Assembly: GCF_006345805.1 (NCBI RefSeq) | Contig: NW_021836442.1 | Location: forward strand, 1 to 24,219 | Source of the DNA: Octopus sinensis | Lineage: Eukaryota | Direction of reading: 5' to 3' | Length of the DNA stretch: 24,219 bases | Shown: positions 71 to 23,912 of the stretch, one piece after another | Layout: each line of letters starts with the position of its first letter | Numbering within the stretch: the stretch's first letter is position 1 | Notes under the pieces: model-generated | Databases searched by the model: none | What the model saw: the letters and a program-made list of their open reading frames with translations, nothing else | What the model was told of the DNA's origin: nothing | Position numbers and translations under genes: made by a program

Positions 71-72
71 GA

Positions 73-223
73 AAGGCGGTGAGCTGGCAGAATTGTTAGC
101 ACGTCGGGGAAAAAATGCATAGCGGCATTTCGTCTATCGCAACGTTCTGAGTTCAAATTCCGCCGAGGTCGACTTTGCCTTTCATGCTTTCGGGGTCGAT
201 AAATGAAGTACCAGTGAAACACT
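73..223 (+). mobile_element. tRNA-derived SINE, family M, 3'-truncated
   Basis: Head aaggcggtgagctggcagaa, B box gagttcaaattcc, central domain gtcgactttgcctttcat..ggggtcgataaa..aagtaccag shared with many copies in the window. The domain resembles my recollection of the Meta-SINE domain (unverified). Confidence 0.85.
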
Positions 224-304
224 TGCGCCTATAATAAAAATGATTATTATCATTAATATTGTTGCTGTTGTTGTTTTTGTTGTTGATGTTGTTTTGTTGT
301 TGTT

Positions 305-1463: not shown

Positions 1464-1684
1464 AAAGGCGGCGAGCTGGTAGAAACGTTAGCACGCGTTG
1501 CGGTATTTCGTCTGTCTTTGCGTTCTGAGTTCAAATTCCGCCGAGGTCGACTTTGCCTTTCATCCTTTCGGGGTCGATTAAATAAGTACCAGTTACGCAC
1601 TGGCGTCGATGTAATCGACTTAATACCTATGTCTGTCCTTGTTTGCCCCCTCTATGTTTAGCCCCCTGTGGGCAATAAAAAAAA
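1464..1684 (+). mobile_element. SINE family M, full monomer with TSD
   Basis: Full structure with A-rich end; perfect 14-bp TSD aataatgctttaaa at 1447-1460 and 1685-1698. Confidence 0.93.
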
Positions 1685-1772
1685 AATAATGCTTTAAATT
1701 CTCACTCACATGGCGAAACGCCTATGATAGTTTAAATGCTTTTCTTTATGTGTATATGGATGCACGTACGTA

Positions 1773-1925
1773 GCACCCACCAAAGTAGAGACCATTGTCG
1801 CACGAAGTTCATTGTGCACAATACTCTCAACTCTCTCACGTGATATGCTAACAGCATTGGCTATTTGATTTACATTCAATCGCCTGTCGCCCATTACCAT
1901 GTGGTGAACACGATCCATGTCGAAG
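1773..1925 (-). pseudogene. Decayed mariner transposase fragment (second HTH to WVPR-like linker)
   Basis: DRVHHMVMGDRRLNVNQIANAVSISRERVESIVHNEL matches the mariner pattern V..DRR.T..EIA..VGIS..SV..ILH..L; frameshifted where KVSARWVP is expected. Confidence 0.8.
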
Positions 1926-1994
1926 CGACAGCTGCAGGATGTCCAACACAGACCACACAAACACACACACATACATATATATAAATACATATAT

Positions 1995-3029: not shown

Positions 3030-3486
3030 AACTGTGAAGATCGTTCTGCCGCCCTCCTTTGGCTAGGAAGGACAGGCAGCGTTTATCTGTCTGGTGGGCA
3101 TAACAAAAGTGGCAGCGTGGTGGACGCGATTGAAACGGCGGAAAACTGACATTTTCCTCTTTGACCACACCCTCATCAACTCTTTTCGAATTTCACTTGA
3201 AAAGAAAACTGAAGGCGAAGAGGGAAGTATTGCCTTTCAGCAATAATAATGAAAAACAGATGACAGTGGTGAGTATGGTCCACATGTATGGGCCTGCTCA
3301 GAGCAAGCGCTTTTAGACTAGAGGAAAATCAGAAAGCGCTTGCGGAGTTTACACAGATAGATCACGGATGATCGCGCGTTTTCGCGGGGTTTCAATGGCT
3401 AGTTCACGGATGTCTTTTCTACTGTAGGGGAACAGTTTATTGTTGGGGAATTCGCTTGAAAAGAAAACTGTAAATGAAGAGAGAGT

Positions 3487-3808
3487 GGAGGAGCAATGGC
3501 CCAGCGGTTAGGGCAGCGGACTCGCGATCGGAGGATCGCGGTTTCGATTCCCGGACTGAGCGTTGTGTGTGTTTATTGAGCGAAAACACCTAAAGCTCCA
3601 CGAGGCTCCGGCAGGGGGTGGGGGTGGCGACCCCTGTTGTACTGTTTCACCCCCAACTTTCTCGCACTCTCTCTTCCTGTTTCTTGAGTAACGTTGCGAT
3701 GGACTGGCGTCCCGTCCAGCTTGGGTGGGGGACACATACGCCACAGAAACCTGGAAACCGGGCCCATGAGCCTGGCTAGGCTTGAAAAGGGCGCAAAAGA
3801 AGGAAAGA
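3487..3808 (+). mobile_element. tRNA-derived SINE family A with TSD
   Basis: A box tggcccagcggtta, B box ggtttcgattcc; colinear with 12993-13283; TSD aaatgaagagaga at 3472-3484 and 3809-3821. Confidence 0.9.
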
Positions 3809-3824
3809 AAATGAAGAGAGAAGT

Positions 3825-4160
3825 GGGAATCGAAACTGCGATCCTCCGATCTATTTCTTTACTACCCACAAGGGGCCAAACACAGAGGGGACAAACAAGG
3901 ACAGACAAAGAGATTAAGTCGATTACATCGACCCCAGTGCGTAACTGGTACTTAATTTATCGACCTCGAAAGGATGAAAGGCAAAGTCGACCTCGGCGGA
4001 ATTTGAACTCAGAACGTAACGGCAGACGAAATACGGCTACGCATTTCGCCCGGCGTGCTAACGTTTCAGCCAGCTCGCCGCCTGCGATCCTCCGATCGCG
4101 AGCCCGCTGCCCTAACCACTCGGCCATTGCTCCTCCGCTCTCTCTTTCATTTACAGTTTC
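3825..4160 (-). repeat. Inverted duplicate of the family A SINE head plus its 5' flank, interrupted by a family M SINE
   Basis: 3825-3851 plus 4098-4160 is the reverse complement of about 3463-3552 with a few substitutions. Confidence 0.88.
3852..4082 (-). mobile_element. SINE family M, full monomer nested with 16-bp TSD
   Basis: TSD ctgcgatcctccgatc at 3836-3851 and 4082-4097. Confidence 0.95.
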
Positions 4161-4644
4161 ATCAAATTTTATAGCAGTTGGATTGCAGTGGTAAGCACGG
4201 TCCGCGTGGATGGGCCCGCATTGAGCAAGCGCCTTGAGATTACGCGGGGTTTCAATGGCTAGTTCACGGATGTTCTTTTCCACTGATGGGGAACATTTTA
4301 TAGTCGAAATTTCTTGGTTATTTCATTGTTTTATTTGCGAATCTGTGTAGACTGAGTGTTCGTACATCTGTGTTTACTTGGATACCGCGCGGCGGTAATA
4401 CGATCTCATCCACAGGATCAACAGTTATCAGTGTGTGCGATACGTGCAGTGTGTGTGATGTATGCTGGGCAGGCAGCTGGTAAATTGGGGGGGGGGTGCT
4501 GGAGGAGGAGGAGGTGTTGGTGTTTGTGGTGGTGGTGGAGTGGTGGGATGGGTGGTTTTGGTGGAGGTGCTTGTGGTGGTGATGCGTACGGTAGCATGAT
4601 GGTGGCAGTGGCTTATATGATATATAAGATATATAAGATGTGTA

Positions 4645-6128: not shown

Positions 6129-6266
6129 ATACATACATACATACATACATACATACATACATACATACATACATACATACATGCATACATACACGCATAC
6201 ATACATACATACATACATACATACATACATACATACATACATACATACATGCCATACATACATACA

Positions 6267-6298
<32 letters not shown>

Positions 6299-6581
6299 CA
6301 TACACGCATACATACATACATACATACATACTACATACATACATACATACATACATACTTACATACATACATACATGCATACATACATACATACATACAT
6401 GCATACATACATACATACATACATACATACATAATACATACATACATACATACATACATACATACATACATACATGCATACATACATACATACATACATA
6501 CATACATACATACATACATACATACATACATGCATACATACATACATACATGCATACTACATACATACATACATACATACA

Positions 6582-6610
<29 letters not shown>
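6129..6610. repeat. Long interrupted (TACA)n microsatellite
   Basis: Direct inspection; source of the HTYI/MYVC ORFs. Confidence 0.97.
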
Positions 6611-6612
<2 letters not shown>

Positions 6613-9411: not shown

Positions 9412-9463
9412 CTTTTTCTCTATATATATGCGTGTATGTGTATGTCTATATATACATAAATAA

Positions 9464-9565
9464 AAGTACCAGTTTCGCACTGGGGTCGATGTAATCGACT
9501 TAATCCCTTTGTCTGTCCTTGTTTGTCCTCTCTATGTTTAGCCCCTTGGGGGCAATAAAGAAATA
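9464..9565 (+). mobile_element. SINE family M, 5'-truncated
   Basis: Starts at aagtaccag and runs to the tail gcaataaagaaata. Confidence 0.9.
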
Positions 9566-10450: not shown

Positions 10451-10534
<84 letters not shown>

Positions 10535-10630
10535 CCTACCTACCTACCTACCTACCTACCTACCTACCTACCTATCTATTTATCATCTATCTATCTATCT
10601 ATCTACCTACCTACCTACCTACCTACCTAC

Positions 10631-10673
<43 letters not shown>

Positions 10674-10676
10674 CTG

Positions 10677-10707
<31 letters not shown>

Positions 10708-10708
10708 G

Positions 10709-10753
<45 letters not shown>

Positions 10754-10754
10754 T

Positions 10755-10812
<58 letters not shown>

Positions 10813-11070
10813 CTACCTACCTACCTACATACCCCTACCTACCTATCTATCTATCTATCTATCTATCTACCTACCTACCTACCTACCTACCTACCTACCT
10901 ACCTATCTATCTATCTATCTATCTATCTATATATCTACCTACCTACCTACTACCTATCTATATATCTATCTATTCTATCTATCTATCTATCTATCTATTA
11001 TCTATCTATCTATATCTATATATATATATATATCTATATATATATATTATATATATATATATATAATATA
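10450..11070. repeat. About 620-bp compound (CTAT)n/(CTAC)n/(TA)n microsatellite
   Basis: Direct inspection. Confidence 0.97.
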
Positions 11071-12334: not shown

Positions 12335-12568
12335 AATACCTATTTCTTTATTGCCCACAAGGGGCTAAACACAGAGGGGACAAACAAGGACAGACATAGG
12401 TATTAAGTCGATTACATTGACCCCAGTACGTGACTGGTACTTAATTTATCGACCCCGAAAGGATGAAAGGCAAAGTCGACCTCGGCGGAATTTGAACTCA
12501 GAATGTAACGGCAGACAAAATACCGCTAAGCATTTCGCCCGGCGTGCTAACGTGTCTGCCAGCTCACC
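12335..12568 (-). mobile_element. SINE family M, full monomer
   Basis: Complete head to tail; 3' end reads gaaataggtatt. Confidence 0.93.
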
Positions 12569-12664: not shown

Positions 12665-13440
12665 TACCAGGCTCATTCGTATTAGCCCGAGTTGCTGGAT
12701 AATTTTTCGTTCCTTTAAGAATATTGTAGAACGGAAACTTTTCATAGATTGGAATTTAAATCCTAATCTCTATCGAAATTTATTGTTTCAAGAAATCATT
12801 GAATTTGAATTACTTTTAATTTTTTACGATTATAGATAACAACTTGGGCTGTAACTTTTGAGCCTGAGTCAGCCGCGTGTGAAAGATGTCGAGAGAACGT
12901 CTGTTACGAATATTTTTTGACCCAGGGCACTTCAAAGACGACCACCATATGCTGAACGAAAATAAATAAAGTGCGACCAGGCGCAATAAAGTGGAGGCGC
13001 AATGGCCCAGTGGTTAGGGCAGCGGACTCGCCGTCGGAGGATCGCGGTTTCGATTCGCAGACCGGGCGTTGTATGTGTTTATTGAGCGAAAACACCTAAA
13101 GCTCCACGACGCTCCAGTAGGGGGTGGTGGCGACCCCTGTTGTACTCTTTCGCCCCAACTTTCTCTCACTCTCTCTTCCTGTTTCTGGACTGGCGTCCAG
13201 CTGGGGGTGGGGGGACACATACGCCACAGAAACAGGGAAACCAGGCCTATGAGCCTGGCTAGGCTTGAAAAGGGCGCATAAATAAAAAGGTGCAATAAAA
13301 GGAACCGAAGTTATGGGCTGAAATTTCTTACCTGAAGTCAGTGTTATCAGAAAGTAAATCAACTTTCAAATACACGTTCACCTTATTAAATTTATACTCG
13401 GGCTAAGCCGGAACAGCCCGAGTGCCGGAGTCGCTACTGG
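12665..13440. mobile_element. Putative non-autonomous DNA or rolling-circle element with inverted hairpin ends
   Basis: ttagcccgagt (12682-12692) is inverted to actcgggctaa (13396-13406); hairpin actcgggct/agcccgagt (13396-13423); ends ctgg before a TA tract. Confidence 0.3.
12993..13283 (+). mobile_element. SINE family A with TSD
   Basis: Colinear with 3487-3808; TSD aggcgcaataaa (12979-12990) / aggtgcaataaa (13288-13299). Confidence 0.92.
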
Positions 13441-14308: not shown

Positions 14309-14443
14309 GTATATCAAATCATATACACAATAGTCAAAATACCTCGTTGTTTATGCAAGTACGTATGTACATAATTTTCTTTGGGTTTAATCTAAGTTCT
14401 TCTCGAGAGAGAGTTGAAGTCGGTACCCAACAAAGCGATACGT

Positions 14444-14752
14444 GGAGGCACATGGCCTAGCGGTAGTAAGAGCAGCGGACTCGCGGTCGAGGGATCGCGG
14501 GTTCGAATCTCAGACCGGGCGATGTGTGTGTGTTTATGAGCAAAAACACCTAAGCTTCACGCGGCTCCGGCAGACCGTAATGGCGAACTTCTGCTGACTC
14601 TTTCGCCACAACTTTCTCTCACTCTTTCCTCCTGCATCTTGCAGCTCACTCACCTGCGACGGACCGGCGTCCCGTCCAGGCGGGGAACCTATACGCCAAG
14701 GAAACCGGGAAACCGGCCCTTATGAGCCAGGCATGGCTTGAGAATGAACAAA
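14444..14752 (+). mobile_element. SINE family A, diverged subfamily
   Basis: B box gggttcgaatc; shared motifs gagcaaaaacacctaagc and ggcgtcccgtccagg; TSD-like caacaaagcga/caacaaagtga. Confidence 0.88.
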
Positions 14753-16250: not shown

Positions 16251-16489
16251 AGCATACAGGAATAAATGCTTACATACAAATGCGCACGCGCAGTAAGATT
16301 AACACACCTCCACACATCTACTTAATAGCTCAAAAACCGGATGTACTCACTAATCCTGCGAAACGTCAAGATCAAAGAAAGTAAACATAGACACACAGAG
16401 TATACTTACACACATTAATACATGTGTACGTATGTATGTATGTATGTATGTATGTATGTATGTATGTATGTATGTATGTATGTATATAT

Positions 16490-17790
16490 GTCATTTTTCA
16501 GTTTTATTTCAAGATTTCTTGCCAATAAAGGTGGCGAGTAGCACGCCGGGCGAAATGCGTAGCCGTATTTCGTTTGCCGTTACGTTCTGAGTTCAAATTC
16601 CACCGAGGTCGACTTTGCCTTTCATCCTTTCGGGGTCGATAAATTAAGTACCAGTTACGCACTGGGGTTGATATAATCGACTTAATCCGTTTGTCTGTCC
16701 TTGTTTGTCCTCTCTGTGTTTAGCCCCTTGTGGGTAGTAAATAAATAGGTATTTCGTCTGCCGTTACGTTCTGAATTCAAATTCCGCCGAGGTCGACTTT
16801 GCCTTTCATCCTTTCGGGGTCGATAAATTAAGTACCAGTTACGCACTGGGATCGATATAATCGACTTACTCCCTTTGTCTGTCCATGTTTGTCCCCTCTA
16901 TGTTCAGCCCCTTGTGGGCAATAAAGAAATAAGAAGCGTTAGCACGCCGAGCGAAATGCTTAGCGGTATTTCGTCTGTCTTTAGGCTCTAAGTTCAAATT
17001 CTACCGAGGTCGACTTTGTCTTTCATCCTTTCTGGGTCGATAAATTAAGTACCAGTTGCGTACTGGGGTCGATCTAATTGACTGGCCTCCTCCCCCAAAA
17101 TTTCGGTCCTTGTGCCTAGAGTAGAAAAGATTTCTTACCAATAGAGAAAAAGTCGGTTTGTAACCTAGATTCACAGCTTCTTCATTGGAATTCCAACCTC
17201 AACAACAGGGAATTTTCCTTGGTCTGTGGCCGAGGACTGTGAGGTCTGAGGTGGTGTGGTCGTTCAAGCGAAAATGACGGACAACATGGGTGTTCTTACG
17301 TAGATGAATGTCTGGTATTTGTTCGGTGAACCGGTCGGTTAGCCGGCGACCCGTCTGACTAACGTAAAGTTTATTGCAAAGATTGCACCTGATGCAGTAA
17401 ATGAGGCTTGAAGAAGTGCAGGAAGAGTTGCTAATGTAGAAGGTGTGCTGGTTGGATCTAGTGAGAGAGGTCTTGTGGGTGAAGAAGGGACAGGTATGCA
17501 GCAAAGGAAGGATCTGGGTCGGTTTGGAATGGGGAGAAAGCCCTGGAATAGTAGATCATATAGGTTACGGGCATGTTTGAAGGAGGGCAAGGGTGGGTTC
17601 AGGAAGGTAGGGAGGGTGGTGGGATCTAGCTGGAGGCGATGGAAGGCCCGCAGGAGGGAAAAGACGGTGTGGTTGGAGGATCGGTGTGGGGAAGAATAAG
17701 AAGGGCGGTAGTGCGATCGATTTGACGAGTGCTATTTGGGGAAGGGTGGATGGGAATCTGCGGCGCATGAACAAGATGGCCAGGTATTGG
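16490..17790 (-). mobile_element. 5'-truncated Penelope-like element: RT thumb, Cys linker and GIY-YIG endonuclease, decayed and interrupted by the SINE trimer
   Basis: Frameshifted pieces LFMRRRFP, RAFHRLQLDPTTLPTFLNPPLPSFKHARNLYDLL and SCTSSSLIYCIRCNLCNKLYVSQTGRRLTDRF..VVRHFRLNDH match the PLE GIY-YIG pattern IYxIxCxxCxxxYIGxTxRxLxxR..HF. Coding part about 17230-17790. Confidence 0.88.
16528..17126 (+). mobile_element. Trimeric family M SINE inserted as one unit
   Basis: Three central domains in tandem; 17-bp TSD aagatttcttgccaata (16511-16527) / aagatttcttaccaata (17127-17143). Confidence 0.9.
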
Positions 17791-19384: not shown

Positions 19385-19418
<34 letters not shown>

Positions 19419-19890
19419 CTATGTGATTGTATGTACGTGTTCCTGTATATGTGTGTGTGCGCGTCTGTGTGGTGCGCGCGTGTGCGTGAGTGCGTGTGTG
19501 TGTGTGCGCGCGTGTATGTGCATGTGTGCGCGCGTGTGTGAGCGTGTGTGCGTGTGCGTGTACGTGTTTGAGAGTGTGTGCGTGTACGTGTGTGGTGTGT
19601 GTGTGCGTATGTGTGTGTGCGTGAGTGTCCGTATGTGTGTGTGTGTACGTGCGTGTGCATGTACGTGAGTGCGTGTGTACGTAAGTGTGTATGTGTGTGT
19701 GCGTGTGTGTACGTGCACGTAAGTGCGTGTGTGTACGTGTGTGTGCATGTGTTCGCGTGCACGTGAAAGTGTGTGTGTGTGTGTATATGGGTATGTGCGT
19801 GTGTGCACGCGTGTGAGTATGTGTGCGTGCACATGTGTATGCGCGCGCGCGCGCGTGTGTGTGCGTGAGTGTGCGTCCGTGCGTGCGTGT
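19385..19890. repeat. About 500-bp alternating purine-pyrimidine (GT/GC)n tract
   Basis: Direct inspection; includes a (GC)7 run near 19840. Confidence 0.93.
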
Positions 19891-20580: not shown

Positions 20581-20715
20581 ACTATAATACAACTGCTATA
20601 CAAAGGGAACGGCACACAGACAATTCTGTAGAGATATTAACAAATTGCCTCTGAGGATAGCCATGCGAACGTTCAAAAATATCGCCATACTGAGATCTGT
20701 AAATATTGATGATTT

Positions 20716-20925
20716 CAAATTTTGGTGCAAGACCAGCAGTTTGGGGGCAGGGTCTAAGTCAACTGCACTGACCCCGGTATTCAACTGGTACTTATCTTAT
20801 CGACCCCGGTGGAATTTGAACTCAGAATATATATAGACACAAAAACCAAATTTGATCTTAGAATGTAAGGACGGACGAAATACCGCTATGCATTTTGTCC
20901 GGCATGCTAACGATTCTGCATTTTG
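20716..20925 (-). mobile_element. Family M SINE with the alternative tail and a 27-bp internal deletion
   Basis: Tail resembles unit 3 of the trimer (ccc..ccccaaa..ggtcttgcacc); deletion at about 20808. Confidence 0.8.
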
Positions 20926-21078: not shown

Positions 21079-22153
21079 AGGACAGACAAAGGGATTAAGT
21101 CGATTACATCGACCCCAGTGCGTAACTGGTATTTAATTTATCGACCCCGGCGGAATTTGAACTCGGAACGTAGCGGCGGACGAAATACGTATTTCTTTAC
21201 TACCCACAAGGGGCTAAACACAGAGAGGACAAACAGGGACAGACAAACGGATTAAGTCGATTGTATCGACCCCAGTGCGTAACTGGTACTTAATTTATCG
21301 ACCCCGAAAGGATGAAAGGCAAAGTCGACCTCGGCGGAACTTGAACTCAGAACGTACCGGCAGACGAAATACCTATTTCTTTATTACCCACAAGGGGCTA
21401 AACATAGAGGGGACAAACAAGGACAGACATAGGTATTAAGTCGATTACATCGACCCCAGTGCGGAACTGGTACTTAATTTGTCGACCCCGAAAGGATGAA
21501 AGGCAAAGTCAAGCTCGGCGGAAATTAAACTCACAACGTAACGACAGGCGAAATACCTATTTCTTTACTACCCACAAGAGGTTAAACACAGAGAGGACAA
21601 ACAAGGACAGACAAACAGATTAAGCTGATTATATCGACCCCAGTGTGTAACTGGTACTTAATTTATCGACCCCGAAAGGATGAAAGGTAAAGTCGACCTC
21701 GGCAGAATTTAAACTCACAACGTAACGGCAGACGAAATACCTATTTCTTTATTACCCACAAGGGGCTAAACATAGAGGAGACAAACAAGGACAGACATAG
21801 GTATTAAGTCGATTACTTCGACCCCAGTGCGTAACTGGTGCTTATTTAATCGACCCCGAGAGGATGAAAGGCAAAGTCGACCTATGCGGAATTTGAACTC
21901 GGAACGTAACGACAGACGAAATACCTATTTCTTTCCTACCCACAAGGGGCTAAACACAGAGAAGACAAACAAGGACAGACAAACGGATTAAGCCGATTAT
22001 ATCAACCCCAGTGCGTAACTGATACTTAATTTCTCGACCCCGAAAGGATGAAAGGCAAAGTGGACCTCGGCGGAATTTGAACTCAAAACGTAGCGGCAGA
22101 CGAAATACGGCTACGCATTTCGCCCGGTGTGCTAACGTTTCTGCCAGCTCACC
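21079..22153 (-). repeat. Head-to-tail array of six family M SINE units, 184-bp period
   Basis: gaaatac anchors at 21182, 21366, 21550, 21734, 21918, 22102; only the unit at 22153 has the A-box head. Confidence 0.96.
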
Positions 22154-23489: not shown

Positions 23490-23544
23490 TCCCCCCCCCC
23501 CCCCCCAAACACACACAACACACACACACAACACAAACACACAC

Positions 23545-23590
<46 letters not shown>

Positions 23591-23625
23591 ACCACACCCA
23601 CACACACAACAAAACACACACACAA

Positions 23626-23664
<39 letters not shown>

Positions 23665-23878
23665 AACACACACACACACACACACACTTACCCCACACTG
23701 ACACGCACACACACACACCTATACATGCATACACATGCACATTCGCACACACATATATGGAATACATACCGAATGCACACACATACACAGACATACATAC
23801 ACACACTTCCACACACACACAAGCTTACACACACTTCCACACATACAAACCCGCACACACACACATTCACATGTCACC

Positions 23879-23912
<34 letters not shown>

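What the first reader, a model, noticed from the sequence alone, without database searches (positions are those of the whole stretch)
16511..17143. SINE multimer moved as one unit, with the same fixed junction as the 6-mer array
Seen: three family M units sit between a single 17-bp TSD. Unit 2 starts 184 bp after unit 1 at the junction aaataggtatttcgtc, the same quasi-palindromic gaaata-gg-tatttc junction used throughout 21079-22153. Internal units keep the B box but lack the A box, and there is no TTTT on the transcribed strand, so one Pol III start could read through all units. Inference: a SINE with a variable number of self-derived internal units, copied from multimeric transcripts. Possible routes are a multimeric master, fixed-site template jumping by the RT, or rolling-circle reverse transcription of a circularised 184-nt RNA.
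Basis: partly seen in the sequence, partly recalled or inferred. Interest (0 to 1): 0.72.

Follow-up and report, generated by a model that had tools for sequence, protein, structure and literature searches.

The report
SINE multimer inserted as one piece
A short retrotransposon (SINE) of an invertebrate genome occurs here as head-to-tail multimers joined at one fixed internal point, and one such composite carries a single target-site duplication, so it was probably pasted in as one piece; this adds a case to the known link between SINEs and small tandem arrays and is not a new kind of element.

Summary
A 599-bp block (16528-17126) lies between two abutting 17-bp direct repeats that match at 16 of 17 positions. 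Dispersed monomers of the same SINE have TSDs of the same length class (15-16 bp).

The exact SINE 3' end (AAAGAAATA) is fused to GGTATTTCG, giving a period of 184 bp. The same join occurs at all five junctions of the 6-unit array at 21079-22153.

Unit 3 differs. It belongs to another subfamily, has its own nearly complete head and a different tail, and is joined at another point.

The repeat unit starts at the first base of the 3' arm of a 13-bp hairpin in the head. Adjacent array units belong to two subfamilies that also exist as monomers, in the order a-b-a-b-a. This argues against decay of one duplicated monomer and against rolling-circle copying of a single 184-nt circle.

Best reading: the junctions were made at the RNA or reverse-transcriptase level, the composite integrated in one event, and the longer array grew in dimer phase. 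Nothing from the same genome outside this window could be retrieved, so no census was possible. SINE-derived tandem arrays and SINE multimers are already described, so I file this as a new member of a known kind.

The parts
16511..16527 (+). 5' copy of the target-site duplication (AAGATTTCTTGCCAATA)
   Evidence: Matches 17127-17143 at 16/17 and abuts the element.
16528..16747 (+). Unit 1: full-length a-type SINE. Its head (16528-16564) has a 13-nt internal deletion. A-box-like motif at 16539-16549; head hairpin at 16547-16576; B box at 16589-16601. It ends AAATAAATA.
   Evidence: Sequence reading; alignment with monomers and array units; hairpin fold.
16748..16931 (+). Unit 2: a 184-bp head-less unit that starts at GGTATTTCG (first base of the 3' arm of the head hairpin) and ends AAAGAAATA. 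It has a B box but no A box.
   Evidence: TRF period 184; junction listing; alignment.
16932..17126 (+). Unit 3: SINE of another subfamily (tail B), 5'-truncated by about 13 nt. It has its own A-box-like motif, hairpin and B box, and a different 3' tail.
   Evidence: 75-80% identity to the full-length units. Its tail resembles the copy at 20713-20917.
17127..17143 (+). 3' copy of the target-site duplication (AAGATTTCTTACCAATA)
21079..22153 (-). Six-unit array of the same SINE. The first unit has a head. Five junctions lie at the same point. Subfamily order is a-b-a-b-a plus an a-like last unit that has a 27-bp internal deletion and a truncated 3' end. No TSD found.
3852..4081 (-). Reference monomer (a-type) with a perfect 16-bp TSD (4082-4097 and 3836-3851). 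It defines the 5' and 3' ends of the family.
1464..1685 (+). Reference monomer (b-type), with a TSD ATAATGCTTTAAA(A)T(T) that matches at 14/15. Coordinates are approximate to within 2 nt.
9451..9565 (+). 5'-truncated monomer that starts in the core and keeps an intact tail, lying in AT-rich simple sequence.
12341..12565 (-). Reference monomer (b-type head GCTTAGCGGTATTT). No clear TSD.
20713..20917 (-). Old, diverged SINE of the tail-B type, about 160 bp downstream of the 6-unit array and in the same orientation.

Best explanation
This is a tRNA-like, Pol III-type SINE of an invertebrate genome. It exists both as about 230-bp monomers and as short head-to-tail arrays.

Structure of the arrays: every unit after the first lacks the first 52 nt. 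The join always fuses the exact 3' end of one SINE RNA (…AAAGAAATA) to the first base of the 3' arm of the strong hairpin in the head of the next (GGTATTTCG…).

Proposed origin of the joins (inferred): they were made during reverse transcription. The reverse transcriptase ran off the 5' end of a shortened SINE RNA, either cut or stalled at the hairpin loop, and continued on the 3' end of another SINE RNA. This is end-to-end template jumping. The short complementarity GAAAUA/UAUUUC may have held the two ends together.

Proposed history of the locus at 16511-17143 (inferred from the single TSD): one integration event brought in an a-type unit, a head-less unit and a nearly full-length SINE of a second subfamily. 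The last join (tail to position ~14 of the other SINE) is a second join of the same kind.

Proposed history of the 6-unit array: it shares the junction, was built from two monomer subfamilies, and then grew in 368-bp (dimer) phase by unequal exchange.

The element has no evident host function. It is an early stage of a SINE turning into a small tandem repeat.
For: Shown directly:
- One 16/17 TSD abuts the 599-bp composite. Monomers have TSDs of 14/15 and 16/16, so the same integration machinery is implied. No 15-17-bp repeat flanks any sub-element.
- The junction coincides with the 3' end that TSD-flanked monomers define. A DNA-level duplication has no reason to end there.
- The same junction occurs at two loci whose flanks are unrelated.
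- The head forms a 13-bp hairpin with a UAGC tetraloop (-20.7 kcal/mol; 0 of 200 shuffles fold as well). The repeat unit starts at the first base of its 3' arm, and that base is G, as in b-type heads.
- A 5'-truncated copy with an intact tail exists at 9451-9565.
- Adjacent units of the long array differ at 3-4 of 5 monomer-subfamily sites (p 0.001-0.013), while units 1, 3 and 5 differ at 0 of 5.
- There is no T4 terminator on the sense strand of the composite.

From the literature:
- SINE-derived tandem arrays with a longer terminal unit and alternating unit types are described in squamates (PMC10702118).
- SINE multimers of unresolved origin are described in rodents and bats (PMC8466645).
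Against: - Only one TSD-flanked multimer is available. The 6-unit array has no TSD and a truncated 3' end.
- A single TSD would also survive an internal duplication after insertion. The two TSD copies differ by 1 in 17 and units 1 and 2 by 15 in 184, so on divergence alone the two units could have been identical at insertion. At the five monomer-defined sites units 1 and 2 differ at two, which is not significant (p 0.054).
- Two multimer loci lie within 4 kb of each other in opposite orientation. This could reflect a local DNA-level event.
- Internal a-type units 3 and 5 begin with the b-type base G, and only unit 6 begins with the a-type base C. The units are therefore mosaics, and exchange within the array has blurred their history.
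- No RNA data exist. The partner LINE and the genome of origin are unknown.
Confidence: 0.5

Rival explanations
1. Multimeric master. A single ancestral dimer or oligomer (head-a-unit-unit…) became a source gene. Its Pol III transcript reads through all units because they lack T4. Copies with different unit numbers are retrotransposed from it. The junction is inherited and not re-made.
For: - The junction is identical at both loci.
- There is no T4 in the composite.
- Both arrays start with an a-type unit that carries the head.
- The state 'GATATAATC' is seen in 5 of 8 array units from both loci and in 0 of 5 monomers (Fisher p about 0.04, my count).
- Unit 1 of each array alone shares GGGTTGATATAATC.
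Against: - The second units are not of the same type at the two loci: x-like at 16748 and b-type in the long array.
- The last junction of the long array has the a-type base C, which hints at a separate join.
- Unit 3 of the composite is a different subfamily, so the source would need to be a different, chimeric locus, or an extra jump would be required.
- Only two loci were seen.
Confidence: 0.25
2. DNA-level origin. Ordinary monomer insertions were followed by head-to-tail insertion of further SINEs into the A-rich tail, and by unequal crossing-over or replication slippage in place. The single TSD belongs to the first insertion.
For: - The long array shows dimer-phase structure, and adjacent units 3 and 4 share a patch (GTTGTGAGTTTAA). 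Both are signs of exchange in place.
- Tail-directed tandem insertion is one accepted source of SINE dimers (PMC8466645).
- Unequal recombination is the origin proposed for the squamate arrays (PMC10702118).
- Divergence between units 1 and 2 is compatible with the TSD divergence.
Against: - The junction has no microhomology that could drive slippage. GAAAT in the tail and in the head would give a different join that retains GCGTAGCC (sequence reading).
- The duplicated segment ends exactly at the retrotransposition-defined 3' end.
- No TSD of the usual 15-17 bp flanks unit 2 or unit 3.
- The same breakpoints occur at two loci with unrelated flanks.
Confidence: 0.15
3. A circular 184-nt RNA, formed by joining the 3' end to position 53, is copied by rolling-circle reverse transcription, followed by a final jump to a full-length RNA.
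For: - The junction is exactly 3' end to position 53.
- GAAAUA/UAUUUC complementarity would bring the two ends of a 184-nt fragment together. The junction hairpin folds at -8.9 kcal/mol, and 5 of 200 shuffles fold as well.
Against: - Adjacent units are different subfamilies in the order a-b-a-b-a, which one circle cannot give.
- No self-cleaving ribozyme or other known RNA family was found in the unit.
- The first unit has a full head in both arrays.
Confidence: 0.07

Closest known systems
SINE-derived satellites (sSat) of squamate reptiles (Vassetzky et al. 2023, PMC10702118)
   Same: - The tandem units are a portion of a SINE.
- One terminal unit is longer and reaches the SINE terminus.
- Several loci share one unit phase.
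- Alternating (dimeric) unit patterns occur.
- Arrays of only a few units exist.
   Different: - Here the unit is 78% of the SINE and includes its exact 3' end.
- One array is flanked by a TSD. TSDs were not examined in that paper.
- The host is an invertebrate.
- The arrays seen have only 2 and 6 units, and their chromosomal position is unknown.
PcH-sat, a 179-bp satellite of the limpet Patella derived from a Nin-SINE (PMC11121367)
   Same: A mollusc tandem repeat of about 180 bp derived from the 3' part of a tRNA-type SINE.
   Different: - PcH-sat lacks both Pol III boxes, forms large pericentromeric arrays (up to 10% of the genome), and has no SINE head.
- The units here keep the B box and sit behind a complete head.
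Tandem SINE multimers of rodents and bats: B2-B2, B1-B2, and Dip multimers of up to eight units (PMC8466645)
   Same: Head-to-tail SINE units. Their origin, by insertion into a tail or from multimeric templates, is explicitly unresolved.
   Different: Those multimers consist of full-length units. Here all units after the first are cut at one fixed internal point.
Chimeric retrocopies made by LINE reverse-transcriptase template switching (L1 U6-type chimeras; end-to-end jumping of R2 reverse transcriptase). From my own knowledge, not checked in the library.
   Same: Two RNA-derived modules lie in the same orientation inside one TSD. The upstream module ends at its exact 3' terminus, and the downstream module is 5'-truncated.
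   Different: The partner LINE is unknown. The repeated use of one donor position (53) is not a feature of the known chimeras.
Ribozyme-bearing tandem Pol III repeats and retrozymes (Schistosoma Sm-alpha, newt satellite 2, animal retrozymes). From my own knowledge.
   Same: SINE-like units occur in tandem. Multimeric transcripts and circular RNAs have been proposed or shown for these elements.
   Different: No hammerhead or other self-cleaving ribozyme was detected in the unit.

Membership tests
tRNA-type SINE (Pol III, LINE-dependent retroposon) | Internal Pol III promoter (A and B boxes) in a 5' head | tested here: met
   B box GAGTTCAAATTCC fits GTTCRANNNCC. The A-box-like TAGCACGCCGG fits TRGCNNAGTGG at 8 of 11 positions and lies about 50 bp upstream (sequence reading).
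tRNA-type SINE (Pol III, LINE-dependent retroposon) | Head recognisably derived from a tRNA | tested here: inconclusive
   ARAGORN and Rfam find no tRNA, even at E<=10. The head has a long hairpin where an anticodon arm would lie.
tRNA-type SINE (Pol III, LINE-dependent retroposon) | Dispersed copies with TSDs of variable sequence, and 5'-truncated copies | tested here: met
   Nine loci in 24 kb. TSDs of 16/16, 14/15 and 16/17. Truncated copy at 9451-9565.
tRNA-type SINE (Pol III, LINE-dependent retroposon) | 3' tail shared with a partner LINE | not testable with these tools
   No LINE with this tail is in the window, and the source genome could not be reached.
SINE superfamily with a conserved central domain (Nin-DC or Meta type) | Central 40-150-bp domain shared with SINEs of distant taxa | tested here: inconclusive
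   A 40-45-bp core (GTCGACTTTGCCTTTCATCCTTTCGGGGTCGATAAATTAAGTACC) recurs in at least 120 JGI metagenome contigs that share nothing else with this SINE. No reference sequence was available, so I could not say which named domain it is.
SINE-derived satellite (sSat) | Head-to-tail repeats whose unit is part of a SINE, with a longer terminal unit reaching the SINE terminus | tested here: met
   Both arrays have this structure.
SINE-derived satellite (sSat) | Many loci or long homogenised arrays, with a preferred chromosomal location | not testable with these tools
   Only two short arrays in one window, and no genome access.
Complex SINE amplifying from a multimeric master (Alu-like) | Many copies of the same multi-unit architecture, each with its own TSD | tested here: inconclusive
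   One TSD-flanked multimer and one array without a TSD. Unit types agree only in part between them.
Retrozyme / ribozyme-bearing tandem repeat | Self-cleaving ribozyme in each unit | tested here: not met
   No Rfam family at gathering score in the window, and none at E<=10 in 16480-17180.
Chimeric retrocopy by template switching | Two modules in one TSD, with the upstream module ending at its exact 3' end and the downstream module 5'-truncated | tested here: met
   True of both joins in 16528-17126. That a jump produced them is inferred, not shown.

The most novel reading that the evidence does not exclude
SINE RNAs of this family are cut, or the reverse transcriptase stops, at the loop of the head hairpin. 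The resulting 184-nt 3' fragments are then concatenated again and again at the same point by end-to-end template jumping. The pairing of the tail GAAAUA with the freed arm UAUUUC assists this, and circularisation may occur in some cases. Retrotransposition itself would then create ready-made tandem arrays, which would be a direct RNA-level route from an interspersed repeat to a satellite seed.
Probability: 0.2. Interest if true: 0.7.

Novelty: new member of a known kind. Interest (0 to 1): 0.4.

Why it matters
How interspersed repeats seed tandem repeats is still open. The papers that describe SINE-derived satellites and SINE multimers leave the first step unresolved: unequal recombination, insertion into a tail, or multimeric templates.

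This locus has three features that together favour a reverse-transcription-level first step:
- a multi-unit block sits inside one TSD;
- the join uses the exact RNA 3' end;
- the join uses a fixed structural landmark, the hairpin loop.

It also gives a precise prediction, an excess of 5' ends at position 53, that a census of the source genome and RNA data could test. On the evidence of one window it remains a well-described example and not a demonstrated mechanism.

Tried and rejected
1. Census through predicted proteins.
- A 54-aa antisense ORF that spans the junction found nothing.
- The neighbouring Penelope-like ORF found nothing.
- Ten window ORFs are not in the protein collection.

2. 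Collection scans.
- The core 20-mer hit at least 120 metagenome contigs, but they share only the 40-45-bp core and show no tandem arrangement.
- The viral collection gave nothing.
- The prokaryotic genome collection gave one 22-nt match in Natrialba with no tRNA there, which I take as chance.

3. Known RNA families. There was no tRNA and no ribozyme. The only hit, a Pseudomonas sRNA model at E = 8.5, merely reflects the hairpin.

4. A possible stub of a second unit after the monomer at 12341-12565 (…AAAGAAATAGGTATT). The alignment to the unit start is no better than 46% of shuffles, so I rejected it.

5. Segmental duplication of the two arrays, or an empty-site paralogue in the window. The flanks of 16511-17143 match nothing else in the window.

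6. A TSD for the 6-unit array. None of at least 7 exact or at least 10 with one mismatch was found.

7. Microhomology-driven slippage between GAAAT in the tail and GAAAT in the head. This would leave GCGTAGCC in the junction, which is not seen.

8. Searching paper texts for stretches of the SINE sequence found no relevant paper.

Full report
**What the window is.** The 24-kb window is eukaryotic, non-coding and very rich in microsatellites (154 TRF rows). It carries fragments of mobile elements and no detectable tRNA or other Rfam RNA. A blastn of the finding against the window shows nine loci of one SINE family:
- monomers at about 1095-1335, 1464-1685, 3852-4081 (-) and 12341-12565 (-);
- a 5'-truncated copy at 9451-9565;
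- a short-tailed relative at about 72-240;
- a diverged relative at 20713-20917 (-);
- the block under study at 16528-17126;
- a six-unit array at 21079-22153 (-).

**The family.**
- The monomer is about 230 bp.
- Its head carries an A-box-like TAGCACGCCGG and a good B box, GAGTTCAAATTCC.
- Between the two boxes lies a 13-bp hairpin with a UAGC tetraloop. It folds at -20.7 kcal/mol, and none of 200 shuffles folds as well.
- ARAGORN and Rfam do not call the head a tRNA.
- The copy at 3852-4081 has a perfect 16-bp TSD and the copy at 1464-1685 a 14/15 TSD. These define the element's 5' end ((AAA)GGCGGCGAGCTGG) and its 3' end (…GTGGGTAGTAAAGAAATA).
- The copy at 9451-9565 is 5'-truncated with an intact tail.
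- All this fits a SINE moved by target-primed reverse transcription. The partner LINE is not in the window.
- A 40-45-bp stretch of the body recurs in at least 120 JGI metagenome contigs that share nothing else with it. It is therefore one of the highly conserved SINE central domains known from molluscs, annelids and other phyla (PMC5804259, PMC4758252). I could not establish which named domain it is.

**Check of the observation.**
- The 17-bp repeats at 16511-17527 and 17127-17143 match at 16 of 17 positions and abut the element on both sides. (The 5' copy is 16511-16527.)
- TRF reports a 184-bp period at 16565-16931 and at 21141-22108.
- The unit 1/unit 2 join is AAATAAATA|GGTATTTCG. In the long array four joins are AAAGAAATA|GGTATTTCG and one is AAAGAAATA|CGTATTTCG.
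- Units after the first begin downstream of the A-box-like motif and keep the B box.
- The sense strand of 16528-17126 has no run of four T. The first is at 17213.
- The third 'unit' (16932-17126) is a different thing. It starts with its own head (AGAAGCGTTAGCACG…, lacking about 13 nt). It is 75-80% identical to the full-length units, which are 85-95% identical to each other. It ends in a different tail, like the old copy at 20713-20917.
- The block is therefore [head + a-type unit][head-less unit][nearly complete SINE of another subfamily].

**Where the junction lies.**
- On the upstream side it is the exact 3' end that the TSD-flanked monomers define.
- On the downstream side it is the first base of the 3' arm of the head hairpin, directly after the tetraloop.
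- That base is G in b-type heads (GCTTAGC|GGTATTT) and C in a-type heads (GCGTAGC|CGTATTT).
- The junctions carry G, except the last one of the long array. That one carries C and precedes an a-like unit.
- A DNA-level tandem duplication has no reason to end at the RNA-defined 3' terminus.
- The only shared motif, GAAAT in the tail and in the head, would give a different join that keeps GCGTAGCC.
- I therefore infer that the join was made on RNA templates. The reverse transcriptase reached a 5' end at the hairpin loop, through cleavage or a stall, and continued on the 3' end of another SINE RNA.
- The second join in the block (…AAAGAAATA|AGAAGCG…) has the same form: an exact 3' end followed by a 5'-truncated SINE.
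As RNA it forms a weak hairpin (-8.9 kcal/mol; 5 of 200 shuffles fold as well). It could hold the acceptor 3' end next to the donor 5' end. This is a hypothesis.

**One insertion or several?**
- Neither unit 2 nor unit 3 is flanked by a repeat of the family's usual 15-17 bp. Only the whole block is. That favours a single integration event.
- A single TSD would also survive a later internal duplication. On divergence alone (TSD 1/17, units 15/184) units 1 and 2 could have been identical at insertion.
- At the five monomer-defined subfamily sites, units 1 and 2 differ at two (p 0.054), which does not settle the matter.
- The argument for movement as a multimer therefore rests mainly on two facts. 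The same junction occurs at a second locus with unrelated flanks, and the junction has an RNA-level character.

**What the long array adds.**
- Using only the five dispersed monomers to define subfamily-diagnostic sites, adjacent array units differ at 3-4 of 5 such sites (p 0.001-0.013). Units 1, 3 and 5 differ at none.
- The array is therefore a-b-a-b-a, made of two subfamilies that also exist as monomers, followed by an a-like unit.
- This excludes random decay of one duplicated monomer. It also disfavours rolling-circle copying of a single 184-nt circle.
- It fits growth in 368-bp phase, as noted for some squamate SINE-derived satellites (PMC10702118).
- Units 3 and 4 share a patch (GTTGTGAGTTTAA), which indicates exchange within the array.
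- The array has a full head, one TTTT (22088), a truncated 3' end and no TSD. It is old and has been modified in place.
- Weak signs of common descent of the two arrays are the state GATATAATC (5 of 8 array units, 0 of 5 monomers) and GGGTTGATATAATC, which only the two first units share.

**Limits.**
- I could not reach any other part of this genome. Protein-based routes and collection scans failed or returned other species.
- Inherited junction (multimeric master) and repeated fixed-site jumping cannot be separated.
- No RNA evidence exists.

**Comparison with what is known.** All of the following are already described:
- SINE-derived tandem arrays with a longer terminal unit and alternating units (PMC10702118);
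- a roughly 180-bp mollusc satellite derived from a SINE (PMC11121367);
- SINE multimers of unresolved origin (PMC8466645);
- chimeric retrocopies made by template switching (my own knowledge).

The unit contains no ribozyme, so it is not a retrozyme-type element. The specific points here are the TSD around a multi-unit block, the use of the exact 3' end, and the fixed landmark at the hairpin loop.

**Verdict.**
- I file it as a new member of a known kind.
- Interest is moderate, because the locus gives a concrete, testable handle on how a SINE starts to become a tandem repeat.

Noticed in passing
window 17199-17504 (-): A 101-aa ORF (…LIYCIRCNLCNKLYVSQTGRRLTDRFTEQ…) that looks to me like the C-terminal GIY-YIG nuclease of a Penelope-like element. 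It lies directly downstream of the composite, on the opposite strand. Pfam and the protein database gave no hit, so the assignment rests on my reading of the motif.
   Followed up: partly
window 3400-4400; also 12990-13282 and 14442-14741: The monomer at 3852-4081 is inserted into another repeat family, which has further copies at 12990-13282 (85% identity) and 14442-14741 (77%). Next to the insertion that family has a tRNA-like stretch (GCAATGGCCGAGTGGTTAGG…TTCGATTCCCAC) and internal inverted repeats.
   Followed up: partly
window 1706-1990 (-): The ORF containing RRLNVNQIANAVSISRERVESIVHNEL resembles the N-terminal helix-turn-helix of a mariner-type transposase. This is my reading and was not tested.
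   Followed up: no
L001-L120 (JGI metagenome contigs): At least 120 contigs from host-associated metagenomes carry a repeat that shares only the 40-45-bp core GCCTTTCATCCTTTCGGGGTCGATAAAT with this SINE. It is a deeply conserved SINE central domain in another animal's DNA. None is in tandem.
   Followed up: partly
window 21130-21190 (-) and 20800-20830 (-): The last unit of the long array lacks 27 bp (CGAGGTCGACTTTGCCTTTCATCCTTT), which lies between the direct repeats GAGGTCGA and GGGGTCGA. The old tail-B copy at 20713-20917 lacks the same segment. This is either recurrent slippage or an old subfamily difference.
   Followed up: no
window 72-240 (+): A third relative has the same head and core but a short, different tail (…GTACCAGTGAAACACTTGCGCCTATAATAAAAATG). 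The head and core are thus combined with at least three tails in this genome.
   Followed up: no
window 21079-20918 and 16932: In both multimer loci a tail-B-type SINE lies downstream in the same orientation. It is directly fused at 16932 and about 160 bp away at 20917. This may be coincidence. The two tail-B copies are only about 68% alike.
   Followed up: no
whole window: Microsatellite density is very high. Examples are (ATAC)n at 6129-6611, (TCTA)n at 10451-11045, (TG)n at 19386-19805 and (AC)n at 23509-23910.
   Followed up: no
L121 3318-3339 (Natrialba taiwanensis contig): An exact 22-nt match to TTCAAATTCCGCCGAGGTCGAC in an archaeal genome, with no tRNA gene there. About 0.07 such matches are expected by chance in that collection, so I treat it as chance.
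   Followed up: yes
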